From the IMG/VR virus record IMGVR_UViG_3300042402_002564, positions 62,001-126,000 of that record: a stretch of DNA of 64,000 nucleotides; one strand, given 5' to 3'. Under the pieces are notes generated by a model. The model was given only the letters and a program-made list of their open reading frames with translations, was not told the DNA's origin and did no database searches. A program made the translations under genes and the position numbers. This document shows positions 6,639-64,000 of the stretch, piece after piece; within the stretch, counting starts at the first letter, position 1; each line of letters starts with the position of its first letter.

Positions 6639-6709
6639 GCGGGTGTGGTGTAGCGGTAACATACCATCCTTCCAAGTTGTAGTCACGGGTTCGATCCCCG
6701 TCACCCGCT
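6639..6709 (+). tRNA. trnG: tRNA-Gly (TCC)
   Basis: Acceptor GCGGGTG/CACCCGC, anticodon loop CT-TCC-AA, T-arm ACGGG-TTCGATC-CCCGT. Confidence 0.92.
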
Positions 6710-6780
6710 TACCAAAATTTGGATTTAATTCCATTTTTGGTCGAAAAAAATTCCGCCAAAATTTGCTAAAAAACCTTTTT

Positions 6781-6990
6781 ATGAATCCTTATAAAATTTC
6801 TTATAGGAACCTGTGCGAATCTGTAGTTAAAACAACTCCAGAAAATGTTAAAGAAGCAAATGAAGGTTTATTTAACTGTACTATGACATTGCCATCTGCT
6901 GCTAAGCATTGTGGTATGTCTCAAAAAGAAATGAAATTAACTTTTTATGAATATTTAAAGTATAATCCTTCTACTTATAAATTTGATTGA
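6781..6990 (+). CDS. Hypothetical protein, possible small HTH (LPSAAKHCGMSQKEM)
   Basis: Likely true ATG at 6781; the longer ORF overlaps the tRNA. Confidence 0.55.
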   Translation: MNPYKISYRNLCESVVKTTPENVKEANEGLFNCTMTLPSAAKHCGMSQKEMKLTFYEYLKYNPSTYKFD

Positions 6991-7043
6991 GGGGAATATC
7001 TAAAGGGATTGAGCATAACTCTCCGCCCCTCATATATAAATAA

Positions 7044-7325
7044 ATGGTGATTCTTATGAAGTATAGAATCGATACCACATATTGTTGGTATAATAAAGGA
7101 AGTATGATTGTAAAAATGTATTTTATCAATCACATACCATTCACTTTTGATGAACTTCCATCTATCTCTTTAGAAGATCCAGAATTAATCTCTATCGCTG
7201 ACAAAAATAGAAGATACGATCCAGAAGATTTGTATAAAACTTCTTTTTATTTAATTGATGAACAAGCACATCCATGCTTGTTTCCGATAGAACTGGAAAA
7301 TCCAGAAGATCTTCCAGTAGATTAA
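7044..7325 (+). CDS. Hypothetical phage protein
   Basis: ORF preceded by a TATAAATA late promoter. Confidence 0.55.
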   Translation: MVILMKYRIDTTYCWYNKGSMIVKMYFINHIPFTFDELPSISLEDPELISIADKNRRYDPEDLYKTSFYLIDEQAHPCLFPIELENPEDLPVD

Positions 7326-7329
7326 TGTA

Positions 7330-7361
7330 GTAGACCTTATAAATAAAACAACACGGTCTAC
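7330..7361 (+). promoter_or_regulatory. Late promoter TATAAATA inside a translation-blocking hairpin
   Basis: Stem GTAGACC (7330-7336)/GGTCTAC (7355-7361) encloses TATAAATA (7338-7345) and ends just before ATG 7363. Confidence 0.7.
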
Positions 7362-7362
7362 C

Positions 7363-7779
7363 ATGTTAGGAACTTGCTCTTATTGTTCGCAAAAGTTTAA
7401 GTACAAACCATCACAACAAAGTGGTAAGTATTGCTCTAACACTTGTCAGCAAGAGATTCAAAAAAGACAAAGGATTTCTGAGTGGTTATCTGGGGGAAAA
7501 CTTCCAGGTAAAACTACACTAAGAGAATATCTCACAGAAAAACACGGCTATAAATGTTCGTGCTGTGGGATAACTGAATGGAACAATAACCCAATCAGTT
7601 TAGAGGTTGACCATATTGATGGAAACCCCTATAATGATAGTCCTGACAATCTCAGGTTTATCTGTCCTAACTGTCATTCTCAAACACCTACATATAAGGC
7701 AAAGAATAAAGGTAACGGCAGAGTTCATAGACGTGAGAAAGCAAAATTAGATTTTCATAAACAAAAAATATGCTCCTAA
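7363..7779 (+). CDS. HNH (homing) endonuclease with N-terminal zinc finger
   Basis: CSYC...YCSNTC and CSCCG...LEVDHIDGNPYNDSPDNLRFICPNCH. Confidence 0.88.
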   Translation: MLGTCSYCSQKFKYKPSQQSGKYCSNTCQQEIQKRQRISEWLSGGKLPGKTTLREYLTEKHGYKCSCCGITEWNNNPISLEVDHIDGNPYNDSPDNLRFICPNCHSQTPTYKAKNKGNGRVHRREKAKLDFHKQKICS

Positions 7780-7844
7780 AGCATTTAGTGGCGATGTACC
7801 TGACTTGTAATCAGGAGAGGATGGTTCAATTCCGTCTGGGAGCT
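7772..7844 (+). tRNA. trnT: tRNA-Thr (TGT)
   Basis: Acceptor GCTCCTA/TGGGAGC, anticodon arm CCTGA-CTTGTAA-TCAGG, T-arm GATGG-TTCAATT-CCGTC. Confidence 0.9.
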
Positions 7845-14189: not shown

Positions 14190-15029
14190 ATGAATTTTAC
14201 TATATTATCAAATCCTCCATATCAAGACAATAATAAAGCAAAAAATAATAAACTTTGGTATAAATTTATTGAGTTAGATATTAATCTTCTTCAGACTGGC
14301 GGAACTATGGCAAAAGTTACGCCAGCATCTTTCATTGGAACAACGGGATTCGGTAAAAAGTTTTTTCAAAAATGTCAAACAATTTATAATTTGATTCAGA
14401 TTGACTATACTTCTGATAAGTATTTCACTGAAGGAGTATCAATTTGCTCTTGGATTTTAAAAAAAGAACCATATAAAGGAACTACAAAAGTCATACATGA
14501 GACTGGAATTTATTATTTGGATTTGAGGGATGGTCTTCCTTTATTTGGTGAAGAAAAAATATTGCATTCTATTTTTAACAAAATAGCAAACTCAAATCAT
14601 CCAAGAATACCTCTTAAGATTGGTCAGGATATTCCAAATGATGAATATTGTGATGATGGAAAATATGAGGTTTATGCCTCTGGTAAAAATATTAAAAGAA
14701 CTAATGTTGTTCCAACAACTGGAGATTTATTGAAGTTTGTAGTTCCATACTCGTGCTCATATTCTGGTAGATTTATCACAAATGGATATGTTGGTATGTT
14801 AAACTCGTGGTGCCATATTAAAAATGAAGAGGAGGGAGACCTGCTATCAAAAATTTTTGATGTTCCTCTAATACAATTGTTTGTTGAAAATTATAAAACT
14901 ACTGCTGGATTTGCTGCAGCAGTTAAAAATGCAGAAGTTCCTCTTTTAAAGAATTTTGAAAATGTGCATGAACAATTTGATTTTACACCTGAAGAACTTG
15001 AGTATTTAAAAGATAAAAATGTCATCTAA
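14190..15029 (+). CDS. N6-adenine/N4-cytosine DNA methyltransferase, catalytic (NPPY) plus TRD half, Eco57I-like
   Basis: Begins at motif IV (ILSNPPYQ), then LW..F and VTPASF. No SAM-binding motif I is present. Confidence 0.75.
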   Translation: MNFTILSNPPYQDNNKAKNNKLWYKFIELDINLLQTGGTMAKVTPASFIGTTGFGKKFFQKCQTIYNLIQIDYTSDKYFTEGVSICSWILKKEPYKGTTKVIHETGIYYLDLRDGLPLFGEEKILHSIFNKIANSNHPRIPLKIGQDIPNDEYCDDGKYEVYASGKNIKRTNVVPTTGDLLKFVVPYSCSYSGRFITNGYVGMLNSWCHIKNEEEGDLLSKIFDVPLIQLFVENYKTTAGFAAAVKNAEVPLLKNFENVHEQFDFTPEELEYLKDKNVI

Positions 15030-24721: not shown

Positions 24722-25551
24722 AAATATTTAAAGTCCCTCACATAGAATTACATGTAACGCATACTTGCAATTTTAGTTGTGAAGGATGTTCTCATTATTC
24801 TAATCATGGACATTCTGGGTCTTTAACTTTAAAAGAATGTGATGAATGGTTGTATTCTTGGAGTAGAAGATTACAACCAGAACTATTCACTATACTTGGT
24901 GGTGAGCCAACTCTTAATAAAAATTTGATTGATATAATTTATCTGGTTCGGATGATGTGGCCAGATACTGCAACTGCTATTGATCTTGTATCAAATGCTA
25001 GTTTTTTACATACACATCCAAATTTACCGCAGGCATTATTGGATACTGACAGTACTTTAGCAATATCTATTCATAGTAAAGTACATGCTGGATATGTAAA
25101 TAAATTTAAAAAAGGTTATAGATTGACAAAAGAATGGAGAAAGCAATACGGAATTAATTTAGAATTTTGGGATTTTACCACAGATACCTGGACTCCTCAA
25201 TATAATGGATTTGGGAATAATATGCTTCCCTATGAAGATAATAATCCAAGAAAGAGTTGGGAGAAGTGTCTATCTAAAAAAGCTCTACAAATACATGAGG
25301 GTAAATTGTGGAAATGTCCACCATTGGCATATTTACCAATGCAAGCAAAAAAATATAATCTTGACAAAAAATGGGATCCTTATTTAAAATATAAACCATT
25401 AGATTCGGATTGTTCTGATCAAGAACTTGAAGAATTTTTAAATAAAGAAGATGAATGTTTTTGTTCTATGTGCCCTGCAAATATGGATAATCCTTATAAA
25501 AAAAATGATCCAACTCTTCCAGTAAGTTATTGGGAGAAGTTAAATTCATGA
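24718..25551 (+). CDS. Radical SAM protein
   Basis: CNFSCEGC (CxxxCxxC), GGEP and C-terminal cysteines. Confidence 0.9.
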   Translation: MKIFKVPHIELHVTHTCNFSCEGCSHYSNHGHSGSLTLKECDEWLYSWSRRLQPELFTILGGEPTLNKNLIDIIYLVRMMWPDTATAIDLVSNASFLHTHPNLPQALLDTDSTLAISIHSKVHAGYVNKFKKGYRLTKEWRKQYGINLEFWDFTTDTWTPQYNGFGNNMLPYEDNNPRKSWEKCLSKKALQIHEGKLWKCPPLAYLPMQAKKYNLDKKWDPYLKYKPLDSDCSDQELEEFLNKEDECFCSMCPANMDNPYKKNDPTLPVSYWEKLNS

Positions 25552-26972
25552 TTACCTGGGGAATATCATCAGAGAGTCATAATGCTGCACTTTCTGTATT
25601 TGTTAATGATAGTCTAGTCTTCGCAAGCGAAAGTGAAAGATTCAGTGGTATAAAAAATGATGCTTATTTAAATAATGGCATTATTGACTATGCACTAAAG
25701 TTTGGAAAACCAGAATTGGTATGCTGGTATGAGAATCCATATAAGAAAACGTTTAGACAACTTCTTGCAGGTCAAGGATGGATTCAGAACGTCAAAAAGT
25801 ATGTTGATGTTCCAATCAAGTATTATGACCATCACTATACTCATGCTTGTGCTGGTTACTTTACCAGTCAGTTTGACGAGTGTTGTGTGGTGGTTATTGA
25901 TGCTATAGGAGAATTCCAAACACTTACTATCTGGGAAGCAAGAGGTAATAAATTAAAACTTAAATTTCAACGTAAATATCCACACAGCGTTGGACTTTGG
26001 TATTCTGCAATGACACAAAGGTGTGGATTAAAACCAAATGAAGAAGAGTATATCCTCATGGGCATGTCTGCTTATGGGGATAAAACACGTTATGAAGATG
26101 ATATCTATAAAGATTTCATAGGATTTAGAACAGCAACCTTTAAAAAGAATTTACATAAAGGATGTGTTGATTGGAGACCAGATATTAAAAACACTTTTGA
26201 TATCGCTGCTGCAACTCAAAACATTTATGAAACAATTTTTAGAGATATTATGCAAGTAGCATCCAATAAAGTAAAAAGTAAAAATTTAGTTCTAATGGGT
26301 GGATGTGCGTTAAATTGTGTTGCAAATCCAATTGCATATTATTATTTTGACAATTTATGGATTATGCCTGCACCTGGAGATAATGGGTCTGCCATTGGTT
26401 CTGTGCTTGCACATAAAAAGAAACATATTGATTGGCATGGACCTTATCTTGGATATTATATTAAATCAGTTGCATCAAACGAAGAAATTGTTAACCACTT
26501 AATGGATTATGGTCTTTGTGGAGTTGCAAGAGGTTGTGCAGAGTTTGGTCCTAGGGCACTGGGGAATCGTAGTTTATTTGCAGACCCTAGAGATCCACAA
26601 ATTAAATCAATGGTCAACAATATTAAACAAAGACAACAGTTTAGGCCATTTGCACCAGTAATTATGGAAGAATATGTACACGATTACTTTAGAATGCCTA
26701 CAAATTCTTCACCATACATGCAATATGCTGTAAAATGTAGATATTCTAAAAAGTTTCCAGCAATTGTTCACATAGATAAAACAAGTAGAGTTCAAACTGT
26801 TAATAGACAACAAAATACAGAACTTTATGATCTTTTAAAGATGTGGAATGAAAAAACAGGTTGTCCTATGTTATTGAATACTAGTTTGAATATTAAAGGG
26901 AAACCGATGGTAAATGATGAAAAAGATTGTAAAGAATGGGAAGAAACTTATGGGGTTAAAATATTCTCATGA
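25548..26972 (+). CDS. Carbamoyltransferase (NodU/CmcH family)
   Basis: ESERFS, HHYTHA, DAIGE, GGCALN, GDNG, EFGPRALGNRS, FRPFAP and LNTSLN. Confidence 0.93.
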   Translation: MITWGISSESHNAALSVFVNDSLVFASESERFSGIKNDAYLNNGIIDYALKFGKPELVCWYENPYKKTFRQLLAGQGWIQNVKKYVDVPIKYYDHHYTHACAGYFTSQFDECCVVVIDAIGEFQTLTIWEARGNKLKLKFQRKYPHSVGLWYSAMTQRCGLKPNEEEYILMGMSAYGDKTRYEDDIYKDFIGFRTATFKKNLHKGCVDWRPDIKNTFDIAAATQNIYETIFRDIMQVASNKVKSKNLVLMGGCALNCVANPIAYYYFDNLWIMPAPGDNGSAIGSVLAHKKKHIDWHGPYLGYYIKSVASNEEIVNHLMDYGLCGVARGCAEFGPRALGNRSLFADPRDPQIKSMVNNIKQRQQFRPFAPVIMEEYVHDYFRMPTNSSPYMQYAVKCRYSKKFPAIVHIDKTSRVQTVNRQQNTELYDLLKMWNEKTGCPMLLNTSLNIKGKPMVNDEKDCKEWEETYGVKIFS

Positions 26973-32320: not shown

Positions 32321-33487
32321 ATGAATCAATCTTTAGTTGAAAACGGATATATTATAATACCAAATTTTATATGTTCGGAACGTGCAAAAAATTTATCCAA
32401 AGAATTTGCACAAGTATGTAAAGAAAATAATATAGATGGAGATGAGCAAGTTCCGACTTCAAAATCTCAATATGACTATATTTCTTTTTTAGAATTACTT
32501 TGTGAAAAAACTCCTGAAGTATCATCTATTATTGGCGAAACTGTTTTACCAACTTATAGTTATGCTAGAGTATATGAAAAAGGAAGCACTTTACCATCGC
32601 ATACTGACAGAAAAGAATGTGAAATATCAATAACTATCAATTTAGATTCTGATGTATCTTGGCCTATTTGGGTCATGACACCAGATAAAAAGCAAAAAAG
32701 AATCATTTTAAATCCAGGGGATGGTCTTCTTTACTTGGGCATAGATATACCTCATTGGAGAGAAGAATTAAAAGGAAATTATTGCACTCAAGTATTTTTA
32801 CATTATGTAAGAAGTAGAGGACCTAATGTTGCCTTGTATTTTGATAAAGAGAATAGAAAATTTTGCAACTTCAATGAGATTAAAAAAAGTCCAGAAGTGA
32901 TGATAAAAACTGAAAATTATAAGAGTAAAAATCCATTGGATGAATACATTAAAATATATTACTCTGCAATTCCAGATTATGTTTGTGATTTGATTTTAGA
33001 AGAGTATAAAAATTGTGAAGATTGGAATCCAAGTAGAACAGGAAACGGAGAAGTAAATAAATTCGTTCGCAATTGTGATACTATTGGATTGTCGATGGCA
33101 AATGTTATCAACAAAAATTTAGAAACCAGAAAGAAAATCGATACCTTATTATTTGAACATTCTGGTAATACCCTTAAAAAATATGTTGAAGAATTTCCAC
33201 ACTGCCAATTAATTTCTGATAGTGGATATGATCTCTTGAGATATGATATGGGAGGATATTATTCTATTCATACAGATTCTCATAAAACTACACCTAGAAC
33301 AGTGTCCTGTTCTTTTAATTTGAATGATGATTATGAAGGTGGAGAATTTGCATTCTTTGATAGAGAATTAATCATTAAAGCACCAAAAGGGTCTGCAATT
33401 GTATTTCCATCGAATTTTATGTATCCTCATGAAATTATGGAAGTTAAATCTGGATCCAGATATTCTATTGTGACTTGGTTCGTTTAA
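32321..33487 (+). CDS. Tandem two-domain 2OG-Fe(II) oxygenase (prolyl-hydroxylase-like)
   Basis: Domain 1: HTDR...HWRE...QVFLHY. Domain 2: HTD...EGGEF...FPSNFMYPHE...RYSIVTW. Confidence 0.85.
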   Translation: MNQSLVENGYIIIPNFICSERAKNLSKEFAQVCKENNIDGDEQVPTSKSQYDYISFLELLCEKTPEVSSIIGETVLPTYSYARVYEKGSTLPSHTDRKECEISITINLDSDVSWPIWVMTPDKKQKRIILNPGDGLLYLGIDIPHWREELKGNYCTQVFLHYVRSRGPNVALYFDKENRKFCNFNEIKKSPEVMIKTENYKSKNPLDEYIKIYYSAIPDYVCDLILEEYKNCEDWNPSRTGNGEVNKFVRNCDTIGLSMANVINKNLETRKKIDTLLFEHSGNTLKKYVEEFPHCQLISDSGYDLLRYDMGGYYSIHTDSHKTTPRTVSCSFNLNDDYEGGEFAFFDRELIIKAPKGSAIVFPSNFMYPHEIMEVKSGSRYSIVTWFV

Positions 33488-54897: not shown

Positions 54898-55335
54898 TTG
54901 GGATTTAATGAAGAAGGGAGATTCTGTAACTTTTCTCAGTTGTAGTACCTTCCAAATTCAATGGGGTAATAATGACGACCCATATCCAATTTTAGAAGAA
55001 GGTAAGATTTATACTGTTGAAGATGTAAGAATACATAGTTTACACACCAAAATCAAACTAATTGGTTATGATGGGTGGTATAATAGTGTTTGTTTTATAA
55101 GGAACGAATTATGAATGCAATTTTATGGAGTGGTACATTAGACAATCGTTATGAATGTACTGTAGAGCATACATCTCAATACAAAGGTCAATTACGTATC
55201 TTTGATAATCAGAACAACTCAGTTCTTTTGATTGAAGAAGTTGGTGTATCTTATGGTGCAACCTTTGGTGCTGATATGGGTGATGTATCTGATTGGCAAA
55301 ATCGCTGTGCAGAGTTTATTGATTCAATGACATGA
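54878..55335 (+). CDS. Two small hypothetical proteins
   Basis: Coupled ORFs. Confidence 0.5.
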
Positions 55336-55871
55336 GTGATATTCAAATTTATGATGATTATCTACCAGAGAATTATTTTAATCATCTACAAAATATTCTA
55401 TTGCATAAAGACCCAAACTTTGCATGGTATTATAATGATAATGTAGTCGATGAGAATGATCAGGACTTCCAATTTGTACATGTGTTCTATAAGAATCATG
55501 TACCAAATAGTCCTTATTTTAATGAACTCTCATTTGCGATTCAATCATTAAATCCATTGTCATTGATACGCATTAAGGCAAATCTATTACCACGTACACC
55601 AGAACATATTGAACATGGTATGCATGTAGATGTTCCTGATTCTGATTGTTCACATCTAAAGACTGCAATTCTATACATGAATACCAATAATGGTTATACA
55701 CTGTTTGAGGATGGTACAAAGGTCAATAGTGTGGCAAATCGTATGGTCATCTTCCCTACGCAAATGCATCATACTGGTGCCACATGTACGGATGAGAAGG
55801 TAAGAATAGTCATTAACTTTAATTACCTGTGCCAATCACAATTCAATTTACCAGGAATTCAAAATGGATAA
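55332..55871 (+). CDS. 2OG-Fe(II) oxygenase
   Basis: RIKANL, HVD, TAILYMNTNNGYT, HTG and RIVINFNY. Confidence 0.85.
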   Translation: MSDIQIYDDYLPENYFNHLQNILLHKDPNFAWYYNDNVVDENDQDFQFVHVFYKNHVPNSPYFNELSFAIQSLNPLSLIRIKANLLPRTPEHIEHGMHVDVPDSDCSHLKTAILYMNTNNGYTLFEDGTKVNSVANRMVIFPTQMHHTGATCTDEKVRIVINFNYLCQSQFNLPGIQNG

Positions 55872-56334
55872 TTTAGAGCAAAATGCCTTATGGGTCATCA
55901 TGGACCCCTGGTATCCTACACCATACAAATGGGATTTAGAACAATATCCAAACATTGATGAATTGAATGAAGTTGTATTGGATAGAATTATAGATTATAT
56001 TCCAAACTTAAAGCATGTTTGTATCTCCTGCCCATTAACCATTATGGAGGACGATAAGGTTAAAGCAGTCACAGCACATCCAAAAGTATCTCATCTTCAT
56101 AATTTAGAAAACAGTGTATTTAAGTTATACTTTTATATGAAGAAGCATAATCTGAAGTCCATTGTGTATTGTGGATTTCATTATGGACGTTGTATTTTAG
56201 ACAAAGACGACGGGGCAATGAATATGTCAAAGCATTGTGATGTATGGGTTAAAAAAGACTTATGTGGATTGTATCCAGAAGATGATTGGGAATCAACAGA
56301 CAAAGAAACACTTAAGTATGCAAAAATAATTTGA
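55864..56334 (+). CDS. Isochorismatase/cysteine-hydrolase-like protein
   Basis: VIMDPW and YCGFHYGRCI. Confidence 0.45.
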   Translation: MDNLEQNALWVIMDPWYPTPYKWDLEQYPNIDELNEVVLDRIIDYIPNLKHVCISCPLTIMEDDKVKAVTAHPKVSHLHNLENSVFKLYFYMKKHNLKSIVYCGFHYGRCILDKDDGAMNMSKHCDVWVKKDLCGLYPEDDWESTDKETLKYAKII

Positions 56335-56362
56335 TTCAAAATAAATACTTCTTAAAAAGTAT

Positions 56363-57328
56363 ATGAGTAAGACCTATACAGAGAGAATGCAGTATTTAAA
56401 CCGAACTGGTTTGTTCAGTGGTATTACTCATGCCCTTTTAGAAGATAAGGTTAGGAATAATTTTTATAGTGATATTTTAAAAAGTGCAAAAGGTAAACGT
56501 GTTGTTGATGTAGGTTCTGGGAGTGGACTCTTAGGATTCCTAGCATTAAAGCACGGGGCAGAACATGTTACTTTTATAGAACAGGATAAGGTATCATCAA
56601 ATCATATTATGAATGTGATTCGTAGGATGAAGATTGATGAATCAAAGTATCGTGTGATTAATGATGAATTTGTTGCAAGTCGTTGGGATGAATATGAACT
56701 CATTAATCCTGATATGATTGTACATGAAATTATTGGTAATTTTATTTGGAATGAAACAATGACTTGTGCATTTGATGTTCATTTACCAAATGTAGAGATT
56801 ATACCAAGTTCTTATCAATTAAAGTATAGTATTGTTCCACTTACTGATGAAGGATTTAAATTCTTTTGTGATTATGAGAATAGGAATGCAAAGAATAAAC
56901 CAGACCTTGATGTTGATTTAGTAGGGTCTGTATTTGTTGATTATTATACAAAGGTCTTAAGTCTTTATAATACTGAGGTTAGTACAAAACCATCAATATT
57001 GAATCATATAAGAGATAAGGATATTTTAAATGATATCTATTCTAAGGCAATTCATCATTATGACCATGTAGTGAATATTAATGATGAGAATGACTTTAAT
57101 CATAAAAGAAGAGTTAAATTCAAGTTACCTAAAACAAAACGTCCTTATTTAATTCTATGTGAACCATTTGTTCATCATGGTGAGTATACACTTGAGTTTA
57201 AGTCTACCTCATCATTTAATGGTTATAATCAACCTATCTTAGTTCCACCTAATTTAAAGTGTAAGTATTATGAATATGTTTTTGATATTCAACATACTTA
57301 TACGAAGATAGATAATTATTATGCGTAA
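56363..57328 (+). CDS. Class I SAM methyltransferase, PRMT-like
   Basis: LLEDKVRNNFY, VVDVGSGSGLL, FIE and DMIVHEIIGNFIWNE. Confidence 0.8.
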   Translation: MSKTYTERMQYLNRTGLFSGITHALLEDKVRNNFYSDILKSAKGKRVVDVGSGSGLLGFLALKHGAEHVTFIEQDKVSSNHIMNVIRRMKIDESKYRVINDEFVASRWDEYELINPDMIVHEIIGNFIWNETMTCAFDVHLPNVEIIPSSYQLKYSIVPLTDEGFKFFCDYENRNAKNKPDLDVDLVGSVFVDYYTKVLSLYNTEVSTKPSILNHIRDKDILNDIYSKAIHHYDHVVNINDENDFNHKRRVKFKLPKTKRPYLILCEPFVHHGEYTLEFKSTSSFNGYNQPILVPPNLKCKYYEYVFDIQHTYTKIDNYYA

Positions 57329-57338
57329 GATGTTTTAA

Positions 57339-58304
57339 ATGGCAAAATATTCGGAACGAATGATTCATGAGAATCAAAGACCAAATGGTTATAATGGCAT
57401 TTGTTTTGGTCTATTAGAAGATGCCGCAAGAAATAAGTTTTATGATGAATCACTCAAAAGAGCAAAGGGTAAACGTGTTGTTGATGTAGGTTCTGGTAGT
57501 GGATTGTTAGGGTTTTTAGCATTAAAACACGGGGCAAAGCATGTTACTTTTATTGAGCAGAATATTGTATCTTATTCTCATATCAGAAGAGTATCTGAAA
57601 TCATGAAGATTGATAAGTCCCGTTATCGTATCATTAATGATGAATTTGTTGCAAGTCGTTGGGATGAATATGATTTAAAAAACCCCGATATGATTGTACA
57701 TGAATTAGTTGGTAGTTATATTTGGAATGATACAATTGGACAAGCATTTAATCAGTTTATACCAAACGTAGAGATTATACCAAATTTATATGAATTAAAG
57801 TTTAGTATTATTCCTTTAAGCGAATCTGGTTTTAATTACCTTCGTAAGTATCAGAATGAGAAGTCTATTGAGAAGAGAAGATTCCTTGATGTACGTGTTC
57901 CTATTGATAAGAAGTTTATTGCTTATTATGAAAATGTTTTAAATGATTATGATTATGAGATAGGTATCGTTCCTAGAATAATGAGGTCATTGCATGATGA
58001 GTTGTTTAATAAACTATACTCAAAGGATAGAATAGAGTATTATACACATGTATTTGATATTAATAAAGAGAAGGATTATAAGAGTAATACTATTGCATCG
58101 TTTAATTTACCTAAGACAGATAATCCTTATTTAATCTTTATTCATCCGTATCTTCACTCTAAGAAGAATACATTAGACTTTGTAGAGAGTACCTCTTTTA
58201 GTGGTCATCGTAAACCTATACTGATTCCACCTAAAGCGAATTGTAATAAGTTAAGGTATGATGTATTGAAGAATTATATGACGATTGATGATGTAAAAGT
58301 ATAG
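57339..58304 (+). CDS. Class I SAM methyltransferase, PRMT-like paralog
   Basis: LLEDAARNKFY, VVDVGSGSGLL and DMIVHELVGSYIWND; same length as its neighbour (321 aa). Confidence 0.8.
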   Translation: MAKYSERMIHENQRPNGYNGICFGLLEDAARNKFYDESLKRAKGKRVVDVGSGSGLLGFLALKHGAKHVTFIEQNIVSYSHIRRVSEIMKIDKSRYRIINDEFVASRWDEYDLKNPDMIVHELVGSYIWNDTIGQAFNQFIPNVEIIPNLYELKFSIIPLSESGFNYLRKYQNEKSIEKRRFLDVRVPIDKKFIAYYENVLNDYDYEIGIVPRIMRSLHDELFNKLYSKDRIEYYTHVFDINKEKDYKSNTIASFNLPKTDNPYLIFIHPYLHSKKNTLDFVESTSFSGHRKPILIPPKANCNKLRYDVLKNYMTIDDVKV

Positions 58305-58491
58305 TTTTTAATGTTTTTATATTAAAAAATGTATTAAAAAACATATATTAGTGTTTTTAATGTGGTATTATACTAGTGTTATATGGTAGTCTTATACTCT
58401 TATAATCTCTCTTATATCCATTATAATCGTGCCAGATCCTTTGAGTTTTATGCTTATTATACCTCTGGATCCTTGTGATCTTAGGCTGCGT

Positions 58492-58580
58492 ATTATAGCA
58501 CAACCGCGAAAAAATGTCAAGACCCCCGCTCCAAAAACATAAGGACGCGGCATTTTACCATAAGACGCCCCGTGTGTCAA
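58492..58580 (-). promoter_or_regulatory. Two tandem leftward sigma70 promoters
   Basis: On the minus strand: TTGACA-17-TATAAT (58520-58492) and TTGACA-17-TAAAAT (58580-58552). Confidence 0.75.
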
Positions 58581-58588
58581 CTCCCAGA

Positions 58589-58833
58589 ATCTCGACGAGA
58601 ATACACGGTTATATCTCGACTAGATTACATCACGATATAACAGTATCATTATATCTTATAATCTCGACGAGTATATCACATAAGATCTCGTCGAGTCATA
58701 TTACAATATAACATTAGTATTATATCATACAATCTCGACGATACATTGTCACAGTATCATAACATAACTTCATAATTAGTCATAATTATCTCGACGAGTA
58801 TCATATATACCATCAATAAGATCTCGACGAGAT
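58589..58833. repeat. Array of seven ATCTCGWCGAGAT-like palindromes
   Basis: Copies start at 58589, 58613, 58661, 58685, 58732, 58788 and 58821. Confidence 0.92.
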
Positions 58834-58848
58834 GTGCGTCAGATTCCC

Positions 58849-58877
58849 TTGACAGGTCTTGCTGCATCATGTACAAT
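58849..58877 (+). promoter_or_regulatory. Sigma70 promoter
   Basis: TTGACA-17-TACAAT. Confidence 0.7.
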
Positions 58878-58901
58878 GTACACAGTTCGCACAAAGTTCT
58901 C

Positions 58902-60346
58902 ATGGGTAACACCGCATTTATGGAAGCACAAAAGCATAAGTATCGCGTCACTCTAGAACTCGACGTTCTTGGTGACTTCGACCCCCATAATATTAATTGG
59001 GAGAAGCTCTTTGACCTTAATCCTACAGAGAGTGTGAAGTCTTATGTGGAGGACTTGGACTATCCTTGGTAACAGAATATTATACCATAAGGGCATCTAA
59101 TGCGTCAAGTGCTGACGCACCCTTATGTGTATAAGTATTTCAAAGCTGGGGAAGTGACGATGTATTGTCGTCTGCAGGGATACCCTTCCCCTCTTCTGGT
59201 TGTCTGCAAATGATACATCAGAACGCCCGCAAAACCTGCATTGGGTGCCAGTTTGGTGAACCGTCCACCTGTGGCACAAAGACCCAGAAGATGTGGTGTA
59301 CAGTTGCTGGGCAAACGCAATTCGACCGATGATTTTTTTGACATCTACCAATCATGGTTGTGTGTATACTCTGTCTCAAGAGGACGGTGATGAGTTGTAC
59401 TTTGCACCCATCTATGCAAACGGAACTATTAATCTGGAGGAGTTTGCTCCTGTGGATATGAGTACTGTTGACATGGATGACATGGAGGTGTATGATATCC
59501 GTAACCGACTGGTTGCCATGTCCAATATTTGAACTGGCACAAGGGGGTTGACAAGACCCCCACCATCGGTTAAATTTAAATCGTTCACCACTCAACCAAA
59601 CAATGGGAACCCGCTCTCGCATCGGTTACGAACTTCCTGATCACTCCGTGGTTAGTGTTTACTGCCACTGGGATGGTTATGTAGAGAACAACGGTCGCAT
59701 TCTGGTAGAGCACTATCAGAACCGCGATGATGTACAAGAACTGATTGATGGTGGTTCTATGTCTTCTCTTCGCACAACTCATCTGTGGGAGACTGCAGCA
59801 GTACGTGATGAGGATGGTAAGATTGTAGAGAACCCTGATGGTAGTTGGGTTATGTCTCCAACCCGCGATGCACAACCTCTTTATCACACTGAGCGTGGTG
59901 AAGATCTGAATGTGGATCACACTTCATTTGATAAGTTTGTATCAGGTGATTGGGGTGAGGATTATGCTTACCTGTACGACCTCAACGGTAACTGGAAAGC
60001 ATATAAGATTGGGTGGGGACCTGTTGAGCGTGTGGACATCCCCAACTACGTGACAGCGTAGGAACTGGCACACGGGTCCTGGGTCATGACCTAAAACTGA
60101 CCTATACTTCTCTCAGTTCACACCACTCCGCTAATGGCACTCTCAAATCAATCCATGAATAAAATTGCAAGTGCAATGGTTCAAGAGGTTGTTGAGGAAC
60201 TTTATGAGTCCGATGAATGGATGGATTTCCTCTATACTAACATCGGTGGTATCATTGTTGGCAAACTTGGTCAAATTGATGATACTGTCCTGGCAGAATT
60301 GATTATGGGTGTTGCAGACCGTATTAGTCTCAAAGCACACACATAA
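58902..60346 (+). CDS. Early hypothetical genes (58902..59072, ~59329..59532, 59603..60061, 60134..60346)
   Basis: Each sits behind its own promoter. The 59603 ORF has the MGTRSRIG...YCHWDGY motif common in phage early proteins. Confidence 0.6.
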
Positions 60347-60423
60347 TCTCGACTAGATGCGTGTCACGTATCAAATCAATCTCGACGAGATACGTGACAC
60401 ATCATTTGACATCATCTCGATTA
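60346..60423. repeat. Second palindrome cluster plus 12-bp inverted repeat at the tRNA-Leu promoter
   Basis: Copies at 60346, 60379 and a half site at 60414; GTGTCACGTATC/GATACGTGACAC; TTGACA-17-TATCAT at 60406-60434. Confidence 0.85.
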
Positions 60424-60448
60424 TATGTTATCATATAATCAACCACAT

Positions 60449-60532
60449 GGGGATGTGGTGGAATCGGTAGACACAACAGACTTAAAATCTGTCGGAGGCA
60501 ACTCTGTGGGGGTTCAAGTCCCCCCGTCCCTA
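60449..60532 (+). tRNA. trnL: tRNA-Leu (TAA)
   Basis: Acceptor GGGGATG/CGTCCCT, anticodon arm ACAGA-CTTAAAA-TCTGT, long variable arm, GGTTCAAGTCC T-loop, no intron. Confidence 0.92.
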
Positions 60533-60592
60533 TTACCACTCTCAAGGTATATTATACCTGAGGTGGTCCAAACTCTTCTCCTAGAGGCACTC

Positions 60593-60733
60593 ATGCACGA
60601 ATCCACGCTTGATTTGTTTTGCTCTCATGATAATGATAATTTGGATATTGATGATGCTTTCATGTGTGCATTTGAGGAAGAAGCGTCTAAACTGGAAATC
60701 ACAGTAGATTATTATATCGCAGAGTTCCTATAA
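60593..60733 (+). CDS. Small hypothetical protein
   Basis: MHESTLDLF...YYIAEFL with a GAGG RBS. Confidence 0.55.
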   Translation: MHESTLDLFCSHDNDNLDIDDAFMCAFEEEASKLEITVDYYIAEFL

Positions 60734-60814
60734 TATAATGGGGAAGGTGTTTGCCCTAAAAGTTACACTGTTAGATATTAATATTCTATAAAACTAGTGG
60801 GTGGATATTATACA

Positions 60815-60844
60815 GACCTGGGGTGGTGCCCAGGTCTTTTTTTA
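60815..60844 (+). terminator. Rho-independent terminator
   Basis: AGACCTGGG/CCCAGGTCT followed by a T-tract. Confidence 0.75.
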
Positions 60845-60914
60845 TGTTTTGTAACAGACCTCGACAGGGGGTGCTGGTGTGGTATGATTTGAGAGTCAAC
60901 ACGGGAACCTCCCA

Positions 60915-63906
60915 TGTCTCTGGTTTGTGCCTCTGACCTTGCCACCCGCCGCCTGGTGTGGGTGAAGAACAACACCGCCACTGGTGTGCCAGCTGCCGCA
61001 CCGTCCGTCGTCTGGGCAGAGTTCGGTCGCCGTGGTATGATTTGATAGTTCGCAACCGAACCTCATGACCGTCCGCACCAACGTCCTTCCCCTGGATCTC
61101 TGCACTGTCACCCTCACCGAGGCACAGTGGAGCACGATCCGAACTGCTGTGCTCTGCCTCGCTTGTGATTGCCGCATCGCTGGCAAGACCACTGACGCAG
61201 ACTACTATCTGAACGCCTACAACAACCTGAAGGCAGCGATGGGGATGGACGCCTGACCTAGTGGCACAGGGGGACTTGCAAAGGTCCCCCACACCCCCTA
61301 CACTACATTTGTTCATTCAAAAACACCAATGCCAATCAATCTCACCAAAGAAGACCTCAACTTCTACGAAGAAAACTATTCTAATGTCATGCAACTTGGC
61401 ATGATTAACACCTTCGATGAGCGGAGTGATCGGATTCGCTTCCGTTCGATTGCAAAGGCAATTCAGGAGCAAATTGATTCTCTGCAAGTTGAGGATCAAA
61501 AGCGTGTTCCTTTTACAAAGGATGAGATTGTACCTGTTTTTGAAGAGTATCTGTGTTCTTATACTCTCAACGGTCAAGTGAAAGTTTTTGACCGCAAACT
61601 TGCTGCTTCTGGTATTCAATCGTTCCGAAAGAATCCTGTTGCTTCGGTGATGGGTATTCATGGTCAGATTGCATACTACGATCAATACAACGATGTTATC
61701 ACCAAATCGTTTGATCGTGCTGGTAACACTCTGAAGGAGATGCTCCGCCAGTATAATGAAATGATGGGTGTTGAGCGGTTCGCCCTGGACTGATTAACAA
61801 CCCTTATGGGTCAGGGGGTTGACTCCTGACCCATTCCATCCCATACTGTCTTTGTTCACCACTTGAACCTCATGCCCGAAATCACCTGGATTAACGACAT
61901 TCCGATGCCCACAATGTGGGAAGAAGATTATCAAGAAACAGAGTATAAAGATTACGAGGAATCTGATTGGTATAATGACCCTAACTGTGTCATGTCCCGC
62001 CATCATTATTGAACAATGATTGAAGTTCTTGCCGCTTACGTTGTCGGAATGATGCAGGTTGCACCTAATCTCATTCAGACAGATTACCTCAACGAAGACA
62101 AGCAAATCATTTCCGTCACTGAAGTAATCCAAGAGGTTCCACAATCATGACACTCACACACCTCAACTATCAAGAGATTGATGCCCTGATGGCAATTCTT
62201 GAGAGTAGTGATTGGCATTATCTGACTGAACTTGTGGATGCAGACATTCCGCTTCTGTATGACAAACTCACCGAAATGAGGGATGAACTGTGACTGAAAC
62301 TCTCCGACAGTATCACTTCACTGACGAACAGATTGACTTCCTGATGCGAATTGTGCGGAACAATGCACAATTTGAAGATGGTGAAGACCGTGAGTTCATG
62401 GAAGAACTTGCCAATCAAATTGAAGATCAAATCGTCAACCATCCTGACAACGACTGATGACACCTAACGCACCCTACGGTTGCCAAACCTATAAAGATCT
62501 GCTGGTCATGTTACAATCTATGACAGCAGAGCAGTTGGACTGCACTCCTACGGTGTATGATCCTGATGCGGATGAGTATTATCCTATCACCACACTTCTC
62601 ACCGCATCTGACACCAACGACGTGTTAGACTCTGATCATCCCTACCTCTCCTTCTGATGAACCGTTCTGAACTGCAAGACCAACTCATTCAGCAGATGTT
62701 GGATGACATGGATCTCAAGACAATGACCCAACTCTGTTATGATTATCTGGATGAGGGTTATGGTAAGTATTCTGATGAGGAATTGATCACTGAATGTGAA
62801 GAATACTACCCCGATTTGCTTGAAAATCAATAAAGTATAAATTATTACAGGATGGGTTGGTATCCTGATTGTCACCGATACCATAAAACTCTACAGAGTC
62901 TTTCCCGTCCTACCCAATCCCTGAACTGGCACAGACCCCTTGACAGGGTGCCAGGAATCGCTTAATCTAAGAAAACAAGCGGGGGTGAAGCATCCCGCTC
63001 AAAACACTTCACTCAAACCCTTACAATGTGATTTAATTATGTCTCAGTTCGCTTTTACTTCTTCCGCCATCGAAAGCATCTCTGATGTGAATGATGGTAA
63101 AGTGACTATCACCTTCAACGGTGGTCGTGAGTATACCTACGGTGTGCAAGATGTTGAGATGTTCGTGTCTCAACTGAGCACCGTGATTGCCGAACAGCAG
63201 TCCGTGGGTCGTTTTGTAAATAATGCTATCAAAACGGAACAACTGCTCGCAGTGACCGCCGCCTGATAGTATAATACGGGGGGAGGCAACTCCTCCCATC
63301 ACACTACTCCCAAAGAACAATGACTGATTACTTCGACCCTAACGAACAGTTTTCAATCCTTGATCTTATTGATGATTCACAACCTTATGAAGATTTCTCT
63401 CCTGAGGTTAGACAAATGCTTAACGAAGTTGAGTATTACGATGACTACTCTTATGGGGTAGAAGTCGATAATGATTACGACTAATCTCGACTAGTTAATC
63501 ATCATAATCTCGTCGAGATCACGTCATTAAATCTCGACGAGATACGCACACAAATCACTTGAAATTCTTCTCTTTAACATGGAAAATCGTTCGCTCCTGC
63601 TTTCGCTTCTTCGTAAAGGTCAAACTGGTGAAGAAATTCTCCAGATTCTGGAAACTATCATTGGCAGCGATGATGATAGTGATGGTCCTACCCTAAACCC
63701 CATCGATTTCTGATACAATGGAAACTGCATTTGTGACACCCGTATCTAAGAAAGCAAAAAACCGTTTTGCTAATCTTATGGGTGGACTTGATGAGTGTAT
63801 TGTAGAACAACACAAAGGAGACAAAGTGTTCCTCACAAGTGCAAACGGTAAAAACCATTTCTGGGTTAACATTAACAAAGATCCAGACTGGATTGTAGAG
63901 TTCTAA
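60915..63906 (+). CDS. Early region of small hypothetical genes
   Basis: For example 61065..61256, 61329..61793, 62457..62657, 63039..63266 (KTSC-like: SSAIESI...TFNGGREYTY) and 63718..63906. Confidence 0.55.
63484..63543. repeat. Third cluster of three ATCTCGWCGAGAT-like palindromes
   Basis: Copies at 63484, 63507 and 63531 (spacing 23 and 24). Confidence 0.9.
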
Positions 63907-63917
63907 GATTATACCAT

Positions 63918-63943
63918 CCCCCGCCAAGTGCGGGGGTTTTTTT
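63918..63943 (+). terminator. Rho-independent terminator
   Basis: CCCCCGC/GCGGGGG followed by T7. Confidence 0.8.
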
Positions 63944-64000
63944 ATACTTTATAGTATGCTTCCCACCCCTCCCGCCCTCTAGCGTAGGGGCGATGCCCCC

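What the first reader, a model, noticed from the sequence alone, without database searches (positions are those of the whole stretch)
56363..58304. Tandem pair of protein-arginine-methyltransferase-like enzymes
Seen: two 321-aa paralogs behind an AATAAATA late promoter, with near-identical SAM-binding N-halves and divergent C-halves. Known: eukaryotic PRMT1 has MLKDEVRT before motif I and a double-E loop (E-x8-E). Here the equivalents are LLEDKVRN and E-IIGNFIWN-E; copy 2 has E-x8-D. No canonical THW loop is present. Inference: these may be phage enzymes that methylate Arg or another amine on virion or host proteins, with the duplicates diverged in substrate or product.
Basis: partly seen in the sequence, partly recalled or inferred. 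Interest (0 to 1): 0.7.

Follow-up and report, generated by a model that had tools for sequence, protein, structure and literature searches.

The report
Phage tandem arginine-methyltransferase-like enzyme pair
A large freshwater cyanophage-like virus carries two adjacent copies of an enzyme with the full architecture of eukaryotic protein arginine methyltransferases, an enzyme family not yet described in phages; what it methylates is unknown.

Summary
Two 321-aa ORFs (56363-57328 and 57339-58304, + strand) are paralogs with 51% identity: 67% in the N half and 37% in the C half, so "near-identical" overstates the N half. An AATAAATA motif lies 15 nt upstream of copy 1.

The PRMT reading is supported by sequence and predicted structure.
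- The best solved-structure sequence matches are all PRMTs (family profile vs T. brucei PRMT7, E 5.6e-13).
- Both AlphaFold models (pLDDT 86 and 88) match PRMT cores over almost their whole length. The top 15 PDB clusters are all PRMTs (Z 15-19). The next match, PrmA, scores Z about 11 and covers the Rossmann half only.
- The D-x-x-R helix, motif I and the double-E loop are conserved.
- The THW loop is degenerate (SSF in copy 1, TSF in copy 2).
- Copy 2 carries E-x8-D. This is the position where the E181D change alters product type in TbPRMT7.
- A heterodimer prediction gives the PRMT-type arm-on-Rossmann interface (0.69 vs control 0.00).

The family is rare. It was found only in uncultured T4-like phages, not in any cultured phage, and has no close bacterial homologue. 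Each paralog also occurs alone in related phages. The substrate is unknown; protein arginine is the best guess.

The parts
56340..56347 (+). AATAAATA, a T4-type late-promoter-like motif 15 nt upstream of the copy 1 start codon
   Evidence: All 7 copies in the window are on the + strand. Most lie 23-59 nt upstream of an ORF start, including the 1945-aa tail-fibre gene at 8324. The motif is conserved in close relatives L008-L010 but not in distant ones. No transcript data were available.
56363..57328 (+). Copy 1, a 321-aa PRMT-family methyltransferase-like protein with an E-x8-E loop
   Evidence: Model pLDDT is 85.7. VIA Z is 18.4-18.6 against CARM1, with model residues 3-321 aligned.
57339..58304 (+). 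Copy 2, a 321-aa paralog with an E-x8-D loop and no promoter motif of its own in the 10-nt spacer, so probably co-transcribed
   Evidence: Model pLDDT is 87.6. VIA Z is 19.1 against PRMT3.
56435..56458 (+). Copy 1 residues 25-32, LLEDKVRN, on the N-terminal helix. D28 and R31 align with the D and R of the PRMT 'D-x-x-R' motif (copy 2: 57411-57434, LLEDAARN)
   Evidence: Alignments. Among 167 relatives, R31 is kept in 163 and D28 in 141.
56501..56527 (+). Copy 1 motif I, VVDVGSGSG (SAM binding); copy 2: 57477-57503, identical
56723..56761 (+). Copy 1 double-E loop, HEIIGNFIWNETM (E122, E131)
   Evidence: It aligns with TbPRMT7 SEIFGTMMLGES (E172, E181, 5eku numbering). Among 167 relatives E122 is kept in 164; position 131 is E in 128, D in 16 and Q in 14.
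57699..57737 (+). Copy 2 double-E loop variant, HELVGSYIWNDTI (E122, D131)
   Evidence: The D is shared by its orthologs P0006, P0007 and L015.
56840..57049 (+). Copy 1 helical insertion in the beta-barrel (residues about 160-229), the predicted dimerisation arm (copy 2: 57816-58031)
   Evidence: Secondary structure. In the complex prediction, residues 180-199 of copy 1 and 181-201 of copy 2 contact helices 21-36, 54-63 and 81-89 of the other chain. Y194 is invariant and Y195 nearly invariant in the family.
57209..57217 (+). Copy 1 S283-S284-F285, the degenerate equivalent of the PRMT THW loop (copy 2: T285-S286-F287, 58191-58199)
   Evidence: MAFFT alignment A2 and the profile alignment of 167 relatives. 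The F column is W in 91 and F in 31; the column before it is H in 43 and S in 35. Family members P0016 and P0019 still have THF.

Best explanation
[quoted passage not shown] Each protein has a Rossmann SAM-binding domain with the D-x-x-R helix, motif I and a double-E loop. This is followed by a beta-barrel that carries a helical dimerisation arm. By analogy with PRMTs, I infer that SAM binds in the Rossmann domain, with R31 at its carboxylate and E73 at the ribose. The two acidic residues of the loop (E122 plus E131 in copy 1, D131 in copy 2) would hold a guanidinium group, most likely a protein arginine side chain, next to the methyl donor. The enzyme would work as a head-to-tail dimer in which each arm clamps the partner's Rossmann domain. 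The pair arose by a duplication specific to this phage lineage. Both copies keep all cofactor and catalytic motifs, and each occurs alone in related phages. Both are therefore probably active enzymes that have diverged in target or in product (mono- versus dimethyl-arginine), not an enzyme/dead-partner pair. The genes probably form one late transcription unit. Shown here: the ORFs, their paralogy, the family membership by sequence and predicted fold, motif conservation, and the genomic distribution. Inferred: SAM use, the guanidino/arginine substrate, dimerisation in vivo, late timing, and the divergence in product.
For: Sequence: the phmmer PDB hits of copy 1 are PRMT7, PRMT3, PRMT8, PRMT1 and CARM1 (best E 6.8e-8). 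With the family profile, the 42 best PDB hits are all PRMTs (5.6e-13), and the first non-PRMT appears at 1.3e-6. The best hits of copy 2 are PRMT6 and PRMT7. Fold: the top 50 Foldseek PDB hits are all PRMTs. An exhaustive VIA search of 48,161 PDB clusters puts 15 PRMT clusters at Z 15.1-18.4 (265-285 residues aligned, model residues 7-321). It then drops to PrmA at Z 10.9 with 141 residues. Copy 2 behaves the same way, Z 14.9-19.1 and then 10.6. The AFDB hits are type I PRMT and CARM1. Motifs: D28, R31, DVGSGSG, E73, H121, E122, G125 and W129 are invariant in the family, and they are kept across 167 relatives. Dimer: the copy 1 + copy 2 prediction scores ipSAE 0.69 against a best control of 0.00. 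That mark was reached by 58 of 80 solved complexes and 2 of 110 mismatched pairs. The three runs share at least 56% of contacts, and partner pLDDT is at least 83. The interface is reciprocal, arm on Rossmann helices, which is the PRMT dimer mode described in PMC8226133. Independence of the copies: the copy 2 type occurs alone in L015 (90% identity) and the copy 1 type alone in L021 and L022. The pair occurs in L008, L009 and L023. In the tree, the copy 1 and copy 2 clades are sisters (support 100/99) nested among single-copy phage homologues.
Against: No biochemical or transcript data exist for any member. The THW loop, a canonical PRMT substrate-pocket element, is degenerate here (SSF/TSF, no His, Phe in place of Trp), so the pocket may accept something other than arginine. 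Pfam's PRMT_C model does not hit these proteins, and the Pfam and NCBIfam hits are weak and generic (RsmD, PrmA, MTS). No RGG-rich candidate substrate is encoded in the phage genome. According to PMC3417536, bacterial sister groups of PRMTs act on secondary-metabolite peptides. The complex score may partly reflect the predictor's memory of solved PRMT dimers, and it cannot distinguish a heterodimer from homodimers. The residue-level mapping of the THW loop rests on sequence alignment, not on a 3D superposition; hhalign stopped four residues before it.
Confidence: 0.6

Rival explanations
1. These are PRMT-fold enzymes that methylate a non-protein guanidino or amino substrate, such as free arginine or agmatine, a small peptide or metabolite, or an amine on a modified nucleotide or sugar. 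They would then be auxiliary metabolic genes, not protein modifiers.
For: The THW loop is degenerate. PMC3417536 places the bacterial relatives of eukaryotic PRMTs in peptide secondary-metabolite operons alongside dioxygenases. The locus sits in a region of accessory genes: a 2OG-Fe(II) oxygenase-like ORF two genes upstream, a GT11-type glycosyltransferase directly upstream and overlapping in L021 and L022, and a ketoacyl synthase upstream in L005.
Against: None of these neighbours is consistently linked across relatives. The double-E loop and the D-x-x-R helix are conserved as in protein-arginine enzymes. Every structural neighbour above Z 15 is a protein arginine methyltransferase.
Confidence: 0.22
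2. These are RNA methyltransferases, for example RsmD-like rRNA m2G enzymes, as some database names ('predicted RNA methylase') and the top Pfam hit suggest.
For: The best Pfam and NCBIfam hits are Cons_hypoth95/RsmD (E 8e-9 and 2.7e-11). JGI names a distant relative 'predicted RNA methylase'.
Against: The NCBIfam scores are far below the curated cut-off (43.5 vs 117.5 bits), and all these hits cover only residues about 27-103. RsmD-like structures match only the Rossmann half, with Z about 10 and about 140 residues, against Z 15-19 and about 270-285 residues for PRMTs. At the motif IV position these proteins have the PRMT double-E loop (HE-x8-E/D). They lack the (D/N)PP(Y/F) motif of exocyclic-amine nucleic-acid methyltransferases (sequence; the motif definition is from general knowledge).
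Confidence: 0.06
3. The pair forms an enzyme/pseudo-enzyme (prozyme) obligate heteromer like T. brucei PRMT1 ENZ/PRO, with copy 2 (E-x8-D) catalytically dead.
For: The genes are in tandem and probably co-transcribed. The heterodimer prediction passes. 6dnz is among the structural matches.
Against: Copy 2 keeps motif I, E73, R31, E122 and an acidic residue at 131. D at 131 is common in single-copy family members (P0009, P0016, P0017, P0019, P0021). The copy 2 type occurs alone in L015, and the copy 1 type alone in L021 and L022. After the duplication the two copies have similar branch lengths, 0.44 and 0.52.
Confidence: 0.07

Closest known systems
Eukaryotic PRMT catalytic cores, especially Trypanosoma brucei PRMT7 (4m36/4m38/5eku), CARM1/PRMT4, PRMT3 and PRMT1
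   Same: They share a core of about 320 aa: the N-terminal helix with D-x-x-R, the Rossmann domain with motif I (VxDVGxGxG) and an acidic post-I residue, the double-E loop, and a beta-barrel carrying a helical arm. The predicted dimer is head-to-tail, with the arm on the partner's Rossmann domain.
   Different: Sequence identity is only 12-19%. The THW loop is SSF/TSF. The first Glu is preceded by His (HE), where most eukaryotic PRMTs have Ser (SE). The helical arm region is longer, about 70 residues. There are no extra N-terminal domains. The genes are encoded by a bacteriophage, and Pfam PRMT_C does not detect them.
Uncultured-virus 'PrmA-like/AdoMet_MTase' proteins (e.g. UniProt A0A6J5L7A5, uncultured Caudovirales phage; ESM Atlas viral clusters; P0022-P0165)
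   Same: They have the same fold (BFVD top hit, E 6.8e-16). They keep R31, E122 and the acidic residue 131. They are found in T4-like phage contigs; for example L014 lies beside gp13 and gp15. The nearest Atlas clusters are 86-100% viral.
   Different: Most of these keep a (G/T/S)HW loop and share only 20-30% identity. None has been characterised or named as a PRMT.
Bacterial PRMT-like peptide methylases in secondary-metabolite operons (Aravind and co-workers; PMC3417536)
   Same: They are prokaryotic members of the PRMT radiation.
   Different: Those sit in NRPS/dioxygenase operons or are domains of giant synthetases. Here the genes are stand-alone in a phage. No close bacterial homologue was found in 185,579 species genomes; the best hits are 23-35% identical over the N half only.
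PrmA (ribosomal protein L11 methyltransferase) and RsmD (16S rRNA m2G966 methyltransferase)
   Same: They share the class I Rossmann methyltransferase domain and give weak profile hits.
   Different: Only the Rossmann half matches (Z about 10-11, 112-141 residues). They have no beta-barrel with an arm and no double-E loop.

Membership tests
PRMT (protein arginine N-methyltransferase) family | Class I Rossmann SAM-binding domain with motif I (VxDVGxGxG) and an acidic post-I residue | tested here: met
   VVDVGSGSG at residues 47-55 and E73 are invariant in the family. Among 167 relatives, G51, G53 and G55 are kept in 165-166 and E73 in 160.
PRMT (protein arginine N-methyltransferase) family | N-terminal helix motif (PRMT1 'MLKDEVRT'), whose conserved D and R contact the active site and the SAM carboxylate | tested here: met
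   LLEDKVRN in copy 1 and LLEDAARN in copy 2 align to PRMT MLKDKVRT / MMNDEERN. R31 is kept in 163 of 167 relatives and D28 in 141. The roles of these residues come from general knowledge of PRMT1 and were not tested.
PRMT (protein arginine N-methyltransferase) family | Double-E loop (E-x8-E) that holds the guanidinium group | tested here: met
   Copy 1 has E122 and E131, aligned to TbPRMT7 E172 and E181. Copy 2 has E122 and D131. Position 131 is E, D or Q in 158 of 167 relatives.
PRMT (protein arginine N-methyltransferase) family | THW loop in the beta-barrel | tested here: not met
   The equivalent is SSF in copy 1 and TSF in copy 2. Only the aromatic position is kept, as F, and the His is lost. 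Related family members have THF, and most distant relatives have xHW. Some active eukaryotic PRMTs also deviate in this loop; in TbPRMT7 its guanidino-contacting residue is Q329 (PMC8226133).
PRMT (protein arginine N-methyltransferase) family | C-terminal beta-barrel domain | tested here: met
   In the predicted models, residues about 145-321 align with PRMT barrels. The full-length matches have Z 15-19 with 263-292 residues aligned. This rests on predicted, not solved, structures.
PRMT (protein arginine N-methyltransferase) family | Dimerisation arm that contacts the partner's SAM-binding domain | tested here: inconclusive
   A helical insertion at residues 160-229 is present. The predicted copy 1/copy 2 interface is arm on Rossmann helices, score 0.69 against a best control of 0.00. 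It is a prediction only, and it may reflect the predictor's memory of solved PRMT dimers.
PRMT (protein arginine N-methyltransferase) family | SAM-dependent methylation of protein arginine | not testable with these tools
   This needs enzyme assays or methyl-arginine proteomics.
RsmD / Cons_hypoth95 (PF03602) | A protein of about 190 aa that scores above the curated cut-off and carries the amino-methyltransferase motif IV | tested here: not met
   The Pfam hit of 35.8 bits covers only profile positions 26-100 of 182. NCBIfam TIGR00095 scores 43.5 bits against a cut-off of 117.5. The motif IV position holds the HE...E loop.
PrmA (PF06325) | N-terminal L11-recognition domain followed by a C-terminal methyltransferase domain | tested here: not met
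   The match covers only residues 43-128 on profile positions 161-239. NCBIfam prmA scores 24 bits against a cut-off of 183. The fold match is Z 10.6-10.9 over the Rossmann part only.

The most novel reading that the evidence does not exclude
These are the first bacteriophage-encoded bona fide protein arginine methyltransferases. They belong to a viral PRMT radiation that is widespread in uncultured T4-like phages. The two paralogs differ at the acidic residue that controls product type in TbPRMT7, and would deposit different methyl-arginine marks, or mark different targets, on host or virion proteins late in infection of freshwater picocyanobacteria. That would mean arginine methylation is used in phage-host conflict in bacteria.
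Probability: 0.35. Interest if true: 0.8.

Novelty: new variant of a known kind. Interest (0 to 1): 0.62.

Why it matters
Protein arginine methylation by PRMTs is regarded as essentially a eukaryotic regulatory system. Prokaryotic relatives are known only from comparative genomics, and I found no paper describing a phage PRMT. A compact 321-aa phage enzyme with the full PRMT core would have several uses.
- It would be a minimal model for PRMT catalysis and product specificity. The natural E/D and SSF/THF/xHW variants amount to a ready-made mutational series.
- It would point to an unexplored type of host or virion protein modification in cyanophage infection.
- It bears on the evolutionary origin of eukaryotic PRMTs.

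If the substrate turns out to be a small molecule, the pair would instead be a new auxiliary metabolic gene in freshwater cyanophages.

Tried and rejected
1. PHROGs had no family for either protein.
2. tblastn against 50,697 cultured or deposited phage records found nothing, whether with copy 1 or with two distant relatives. The nearest isolate, S-SRM01, has an unrelated 338-aa ORF at the syntenic place.
3. I looked for functional linkage to neighbouring genes: the 2OG-Fe(II) oxygenase-like ORF, the 156-aa ORF, GT11 and the ketoacyl synthase. None is consistently adjacent across relatives.
4. A scan of the whole 246.5-kb genome for RGG/RG-rich or Arg-rich ORFs as candidate substrates found nothing convincing.
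5. I tested for gene conversion between the copies. Nucleotide identity is 73% in the N half and 58% in the C half, and the longest identical word is 41 nt, so this was rejected.
6. The obligate prozyme model was rejected, because each paralog occurs alone in other phages.
7. No RNA sequencing runs were listed, so expression and promoter use could not be checked.
8. hhalign of the family against THW-bearing relatives (E 4e-44) ended four residues before the loop. The THW mapping therefore rests on the MAFFT and HMM alignments.
9. The genome-contig scan with alignment A2 failed for lack of a conserved stretch. With A1 it found only distant hits to the N half.
10. Rfam found nothing in the non-coding stretch downstream except a tRNA.
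Full report
**What is there**

The window is bases 62001-126000 of a 246,502-bp virus record with direct terminal repeats. Its gene content is that of a T4-like myovirus:
- a gp5-like baseplate hub;
- a 1945-aa long tail fibre;
- two RNA ligases;
- a helicase;
- a carbamoyltransferase;
- 2OG-Fe(II) oxygenases.

The nearest cultured relative is the freshwater Synechococcus phage S-SRM01 (Kyanoviridae), with 57% helicase identity. At least 20 lake or freshwater metagenome runs from 2016-2024 hold the locus.

Two 321-aa ORFs lie at 56363-57328 and 57339-58304 on the + strand, 10 nt apart. They are 51% identical over their full length (E 1e-110). Identity is 67% in residues 1-160 and 37% in the rest.

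AATAAATA lies at 56340-56347, 15 nt before the ATG. All seven copies of this octamer in the window are on the coding strand. Most lie 23-59 nt upstream of an ORF start, including the tail-fibre gene. This fits a T4-type late promoter; TATAAATA in T4 is general knowledge. It is not proven, because no RNA run was listed.

The tandem arrangement is real. It recurs in independent contigs L008, L009 and L023. Logan contigs bridge the junction between the genes in three of four independent lake runs. Those contigs break only at a 41-nt word that the two genes share.

**What the proteins are**

Generic libraries say little. Pfam and NCBIfam give weak hits to RsmD, PrmA and MTS that cover only residues about 27-128. 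All the NCBIfam hits are far below the curated cut-offs. PHROGs gives nothing.

Solved structures are more informative.
- Copy 1 matches T. brucei PRMT7 (E 6.8e-8), then PRMT3, PRMT8, PRMT1 and CARM1.
- A profile of the 19-member family raises the PRMT7 match to 5.6e-13. Its 42 best hits are all PRMTs, and the first non-PRMT (an RsmD-like protein) comes at 1.3e-6.
- The best hits of copy 2 are PRMT6 and PRMT7.

AlphaFold2 models of both copies are confident: pLDDT 85.7 and pTM 0.82 for copy 1, pLDDT 87.6 and pTM 0.84 for copy 2.
- The top 50 Foldseek PDB hits for copy 1 are all PRMTs.
- An exhaustive VIA search of 48,161 PDB clusters puts 15 PRMT clusters on top. Z is 15.1-18.4 for copy 1 and 14.9-19.1 for copy 2, with 263-285 residues aligned and model residues about 3-321 covered.
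- The next match is PrmA at Z 10.6-10.9, which covers only the Rossmann half with 112-141 residues.

**Motifs**

Within the family, these residues are invariant: D28, R31, F34, Y35, D49-G55 (motif I), E73, Q74, E102, H121, E122, G125 and W129. Position 131 is always E or D.

The HMMER alignment to full-length TbPRMT7 (5eku numbering) places E122 on E172 and E131 on E181. It places I21 on F71.

According to the review PMC8226133, E172 and E181 each make two hydrogen bonds to the substrate guanidinium. The same review reports that the E181D mutant turns the mono-methylating TbPRMT7 into an asymmetric-dimethylating enzyme, and that F71I also allows dimethylation. The E/D difference between the paralogs therefore sits on a residue known to govern product type in the closest solved relative. 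This is suggestive only. D131 also occurs in several single-copy family members.

The THW loop is not canonical. A MAFFT alignment with distant relatives and canonical PRMT-like proteins puts (T/S/G)HW on S283-S284-F285 of copy 1 and on T285-S286-F287 of copy 2. An HMM-guided alignment of 167 relatives agrees. In it the last column is W in 91 and F in 31. The middle column is H in 43 and S in 35. Two family members retain THF. The hhalign alignment (E 4e-44) stopped just before this loop, so the mapping is based on sequence alignment only.

**Quaternary structure**

PRMTs dimerise through an arm in the barrel that grips the partner's SAM-binding domain (PMC8226133). Both models have a helical insertion at about residues 160-230.

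A complex prediction of copy 1 with copy 2 supports binding.
- The score was ipSAE 0.69, against 0.00 for the best of three controls. That mark was reached by 58 of 80 solved complexes and 2 of 110 mismatched pairs.
- The three runs share at least 56% of their contacts, and partner pLDDT is at least 83.
- The counts hold only roughly, because my own alignments were used.
- The interface is reciprocal. Arm residues 180-199 of copy 1 and 181-201 of copy 2 contact helices 21-36, 54-63 and 81-89 of the other chain. Among them are the invariant Y194, the nearly invariant Y195 and the nearly invariant H81.

This is the PRMT dimer mode. The result may reflect the predictor's memory of solved PRMT dimers, and it cannot separate a heterodimer from homodimers.

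**Evolution and distribution**

Only 17 close relatives exist among 5.8 billion clustered proteins, and none has a functional name. An exhaustive search of 1.84 billion representatives gives 457 proteins at E up to 1e-3, but only 6 at E up to 1e-30. IMG/VR holds 6 loci.

A maximum-likelihood tree places the copy 1 clade (6 sequences) and the copy 2 clade (3 sequences) as sisters, with support 100/99. They nest among single-copy homologues from related phage contigs, and the post-duplication branches have similar lengths, 0.52 and 0.44.

Single-copy relatives occupy the same syntenic slot. It lies at the end of a run of small genes and before a non-coding gap and a conserved 152-154-aa gene.

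Each paralog also occurs alone.
- A copy 2 type, 90% identical, occurs alone in L015.
- A copy 1 type, 73% identical, occurs alone in L021 and L022, overlapping the stop of a GT11-like glycosyltransferase gene.

This argues that both copies are independently functional, and against an obligate enzyme/prozyme pair.

More distant relatives (20-30% identity) also lie in T4-like phage contigs. One of them sits next to gp13 and gp15. The nearest ESM Atlas clusters are 86-100% viral. The top BFVD structure is an unnamed protein from an uncultured Caudovirales phage.

No cultured phage record contains any of these proteins. In 185,579 prokaryotic species genomes, no hit exceeded 35% identity except over short motif-I stretches, and all hits were confined to the N half. 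I found no paper on phage or cyanophage PRMTs. Bacterial PRMT-like peptide methylases are known from comparative genomics (PMC3417536).

**Mechanism and rivals**

The best-supported reading is a dimeric, SAM-dependent guanidino-N-methyltransferase of the PRMT family, most likely acting on protein arginine. It would be expressed as a two-gene, probably late, unit, with paralogs that have diverged in target or product.

My confidence that the proteins belong to the PRMT structural family is about 0.9. My confidence in the full statement, including protein arginine as substrate, is about 0.6.

The main rival is a non-protein guanidino or amine substrate (0.22). The degenerate THW loop and the accessory-gene neighbourhood keep it alive. 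An RNA methyltransferase (0.06) and a prozyme pair (0.07) are poorly supported.

**Verdict**

This is a new, phage-borne variant of a known enzyme family. It is worth biochemical follow-up.

Noticed in passing
window 58305-59600, 60346-60391, 63484-63543: About 1.3 kb right after copy 2 has no convincing ORF. The 11-mer ATCTCGACGAG occurs 16 times (up to 1 mismatch; 0.2 expected) in three clusters, embedded in 33-42-nt direct repeats, and some copies are palindromic. Perfect or near-perfect sigma-70 consensus sites lie here too, for example TTGACA-17-TATAAT on the minus strand at 58520..58492. This may be an early-promoter or regulatory repeat region.
   Followed up: partly
window 58317-58566: Contigs from four independent lake metagenomes fray into different sequences at 58317-58357. 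Word depth also spikes 2-6 fold at 58325-58566. This points to a population-variable boundary, or an element repeated in other genomes, just downstream of the methyltransferase pair.
   Followed up: no
window 55864-56334: A 156-aa ORF with no Pfam or PHROG hit lies immediately upstream of the methyltransferase gene in the close relatives L008, L010, L015 and L023, and nearby in L021. Its function is unknown.
   Followed up: partly
window 55332-55871: A 179-aa ORF matches phrog_274 (E 2e-55; that PHROG is labelled 'DNA endonuclease V') and weakly matches 2OG-Fe(II) oxygenase models. It is probably one of the 2OG-Fe(II) oxygenase-like genes common in cyanomyoviruses, and it is not consistently linked to the methyltransferase.
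   Followed up: partly
window 58000-64000; tRNA at 60448-60533: G+C rises from about 0.31-0.35 to 0.40-0.46 after the gene pair. A tRNA-Leu(taa) lies here, and tRNA-Gly and tRNA-Thr lie at 6639-7844. The long minus-strand ORFs at 60786-61316 look like compositional artefacts.
   Followed up: no
L021:4029-6046 and L022:315-2332: In relatives that carry only the copy 1 type, its start overlaps the stop of a GT11-like (fucosyltransferase family, weak Pfam hit) gene, which suggests translational coupling there. A similar GT11-like gene lies about 1 kb upstream in L008 and L009.
   Followed up: no
L005:6564-8011: In one single-copy relative, a 392-aa ketoacyl-synthase gene and a 90-aa ORF directly precede the methyltransferase homologue. 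This is an unusual auxiliary gene for a T4-like phage contig.
   Followed up: no
window 14190-15029 and 25530-26972: The window also encodes a DNA-methyltransferase-like protein (phrog_3689) and a Nol-like carbamoyltransferase (phrog_1601). A ferrochelatase/2OG-oxygenase-like fusion lies at 32321-33487.
   Followed up: no
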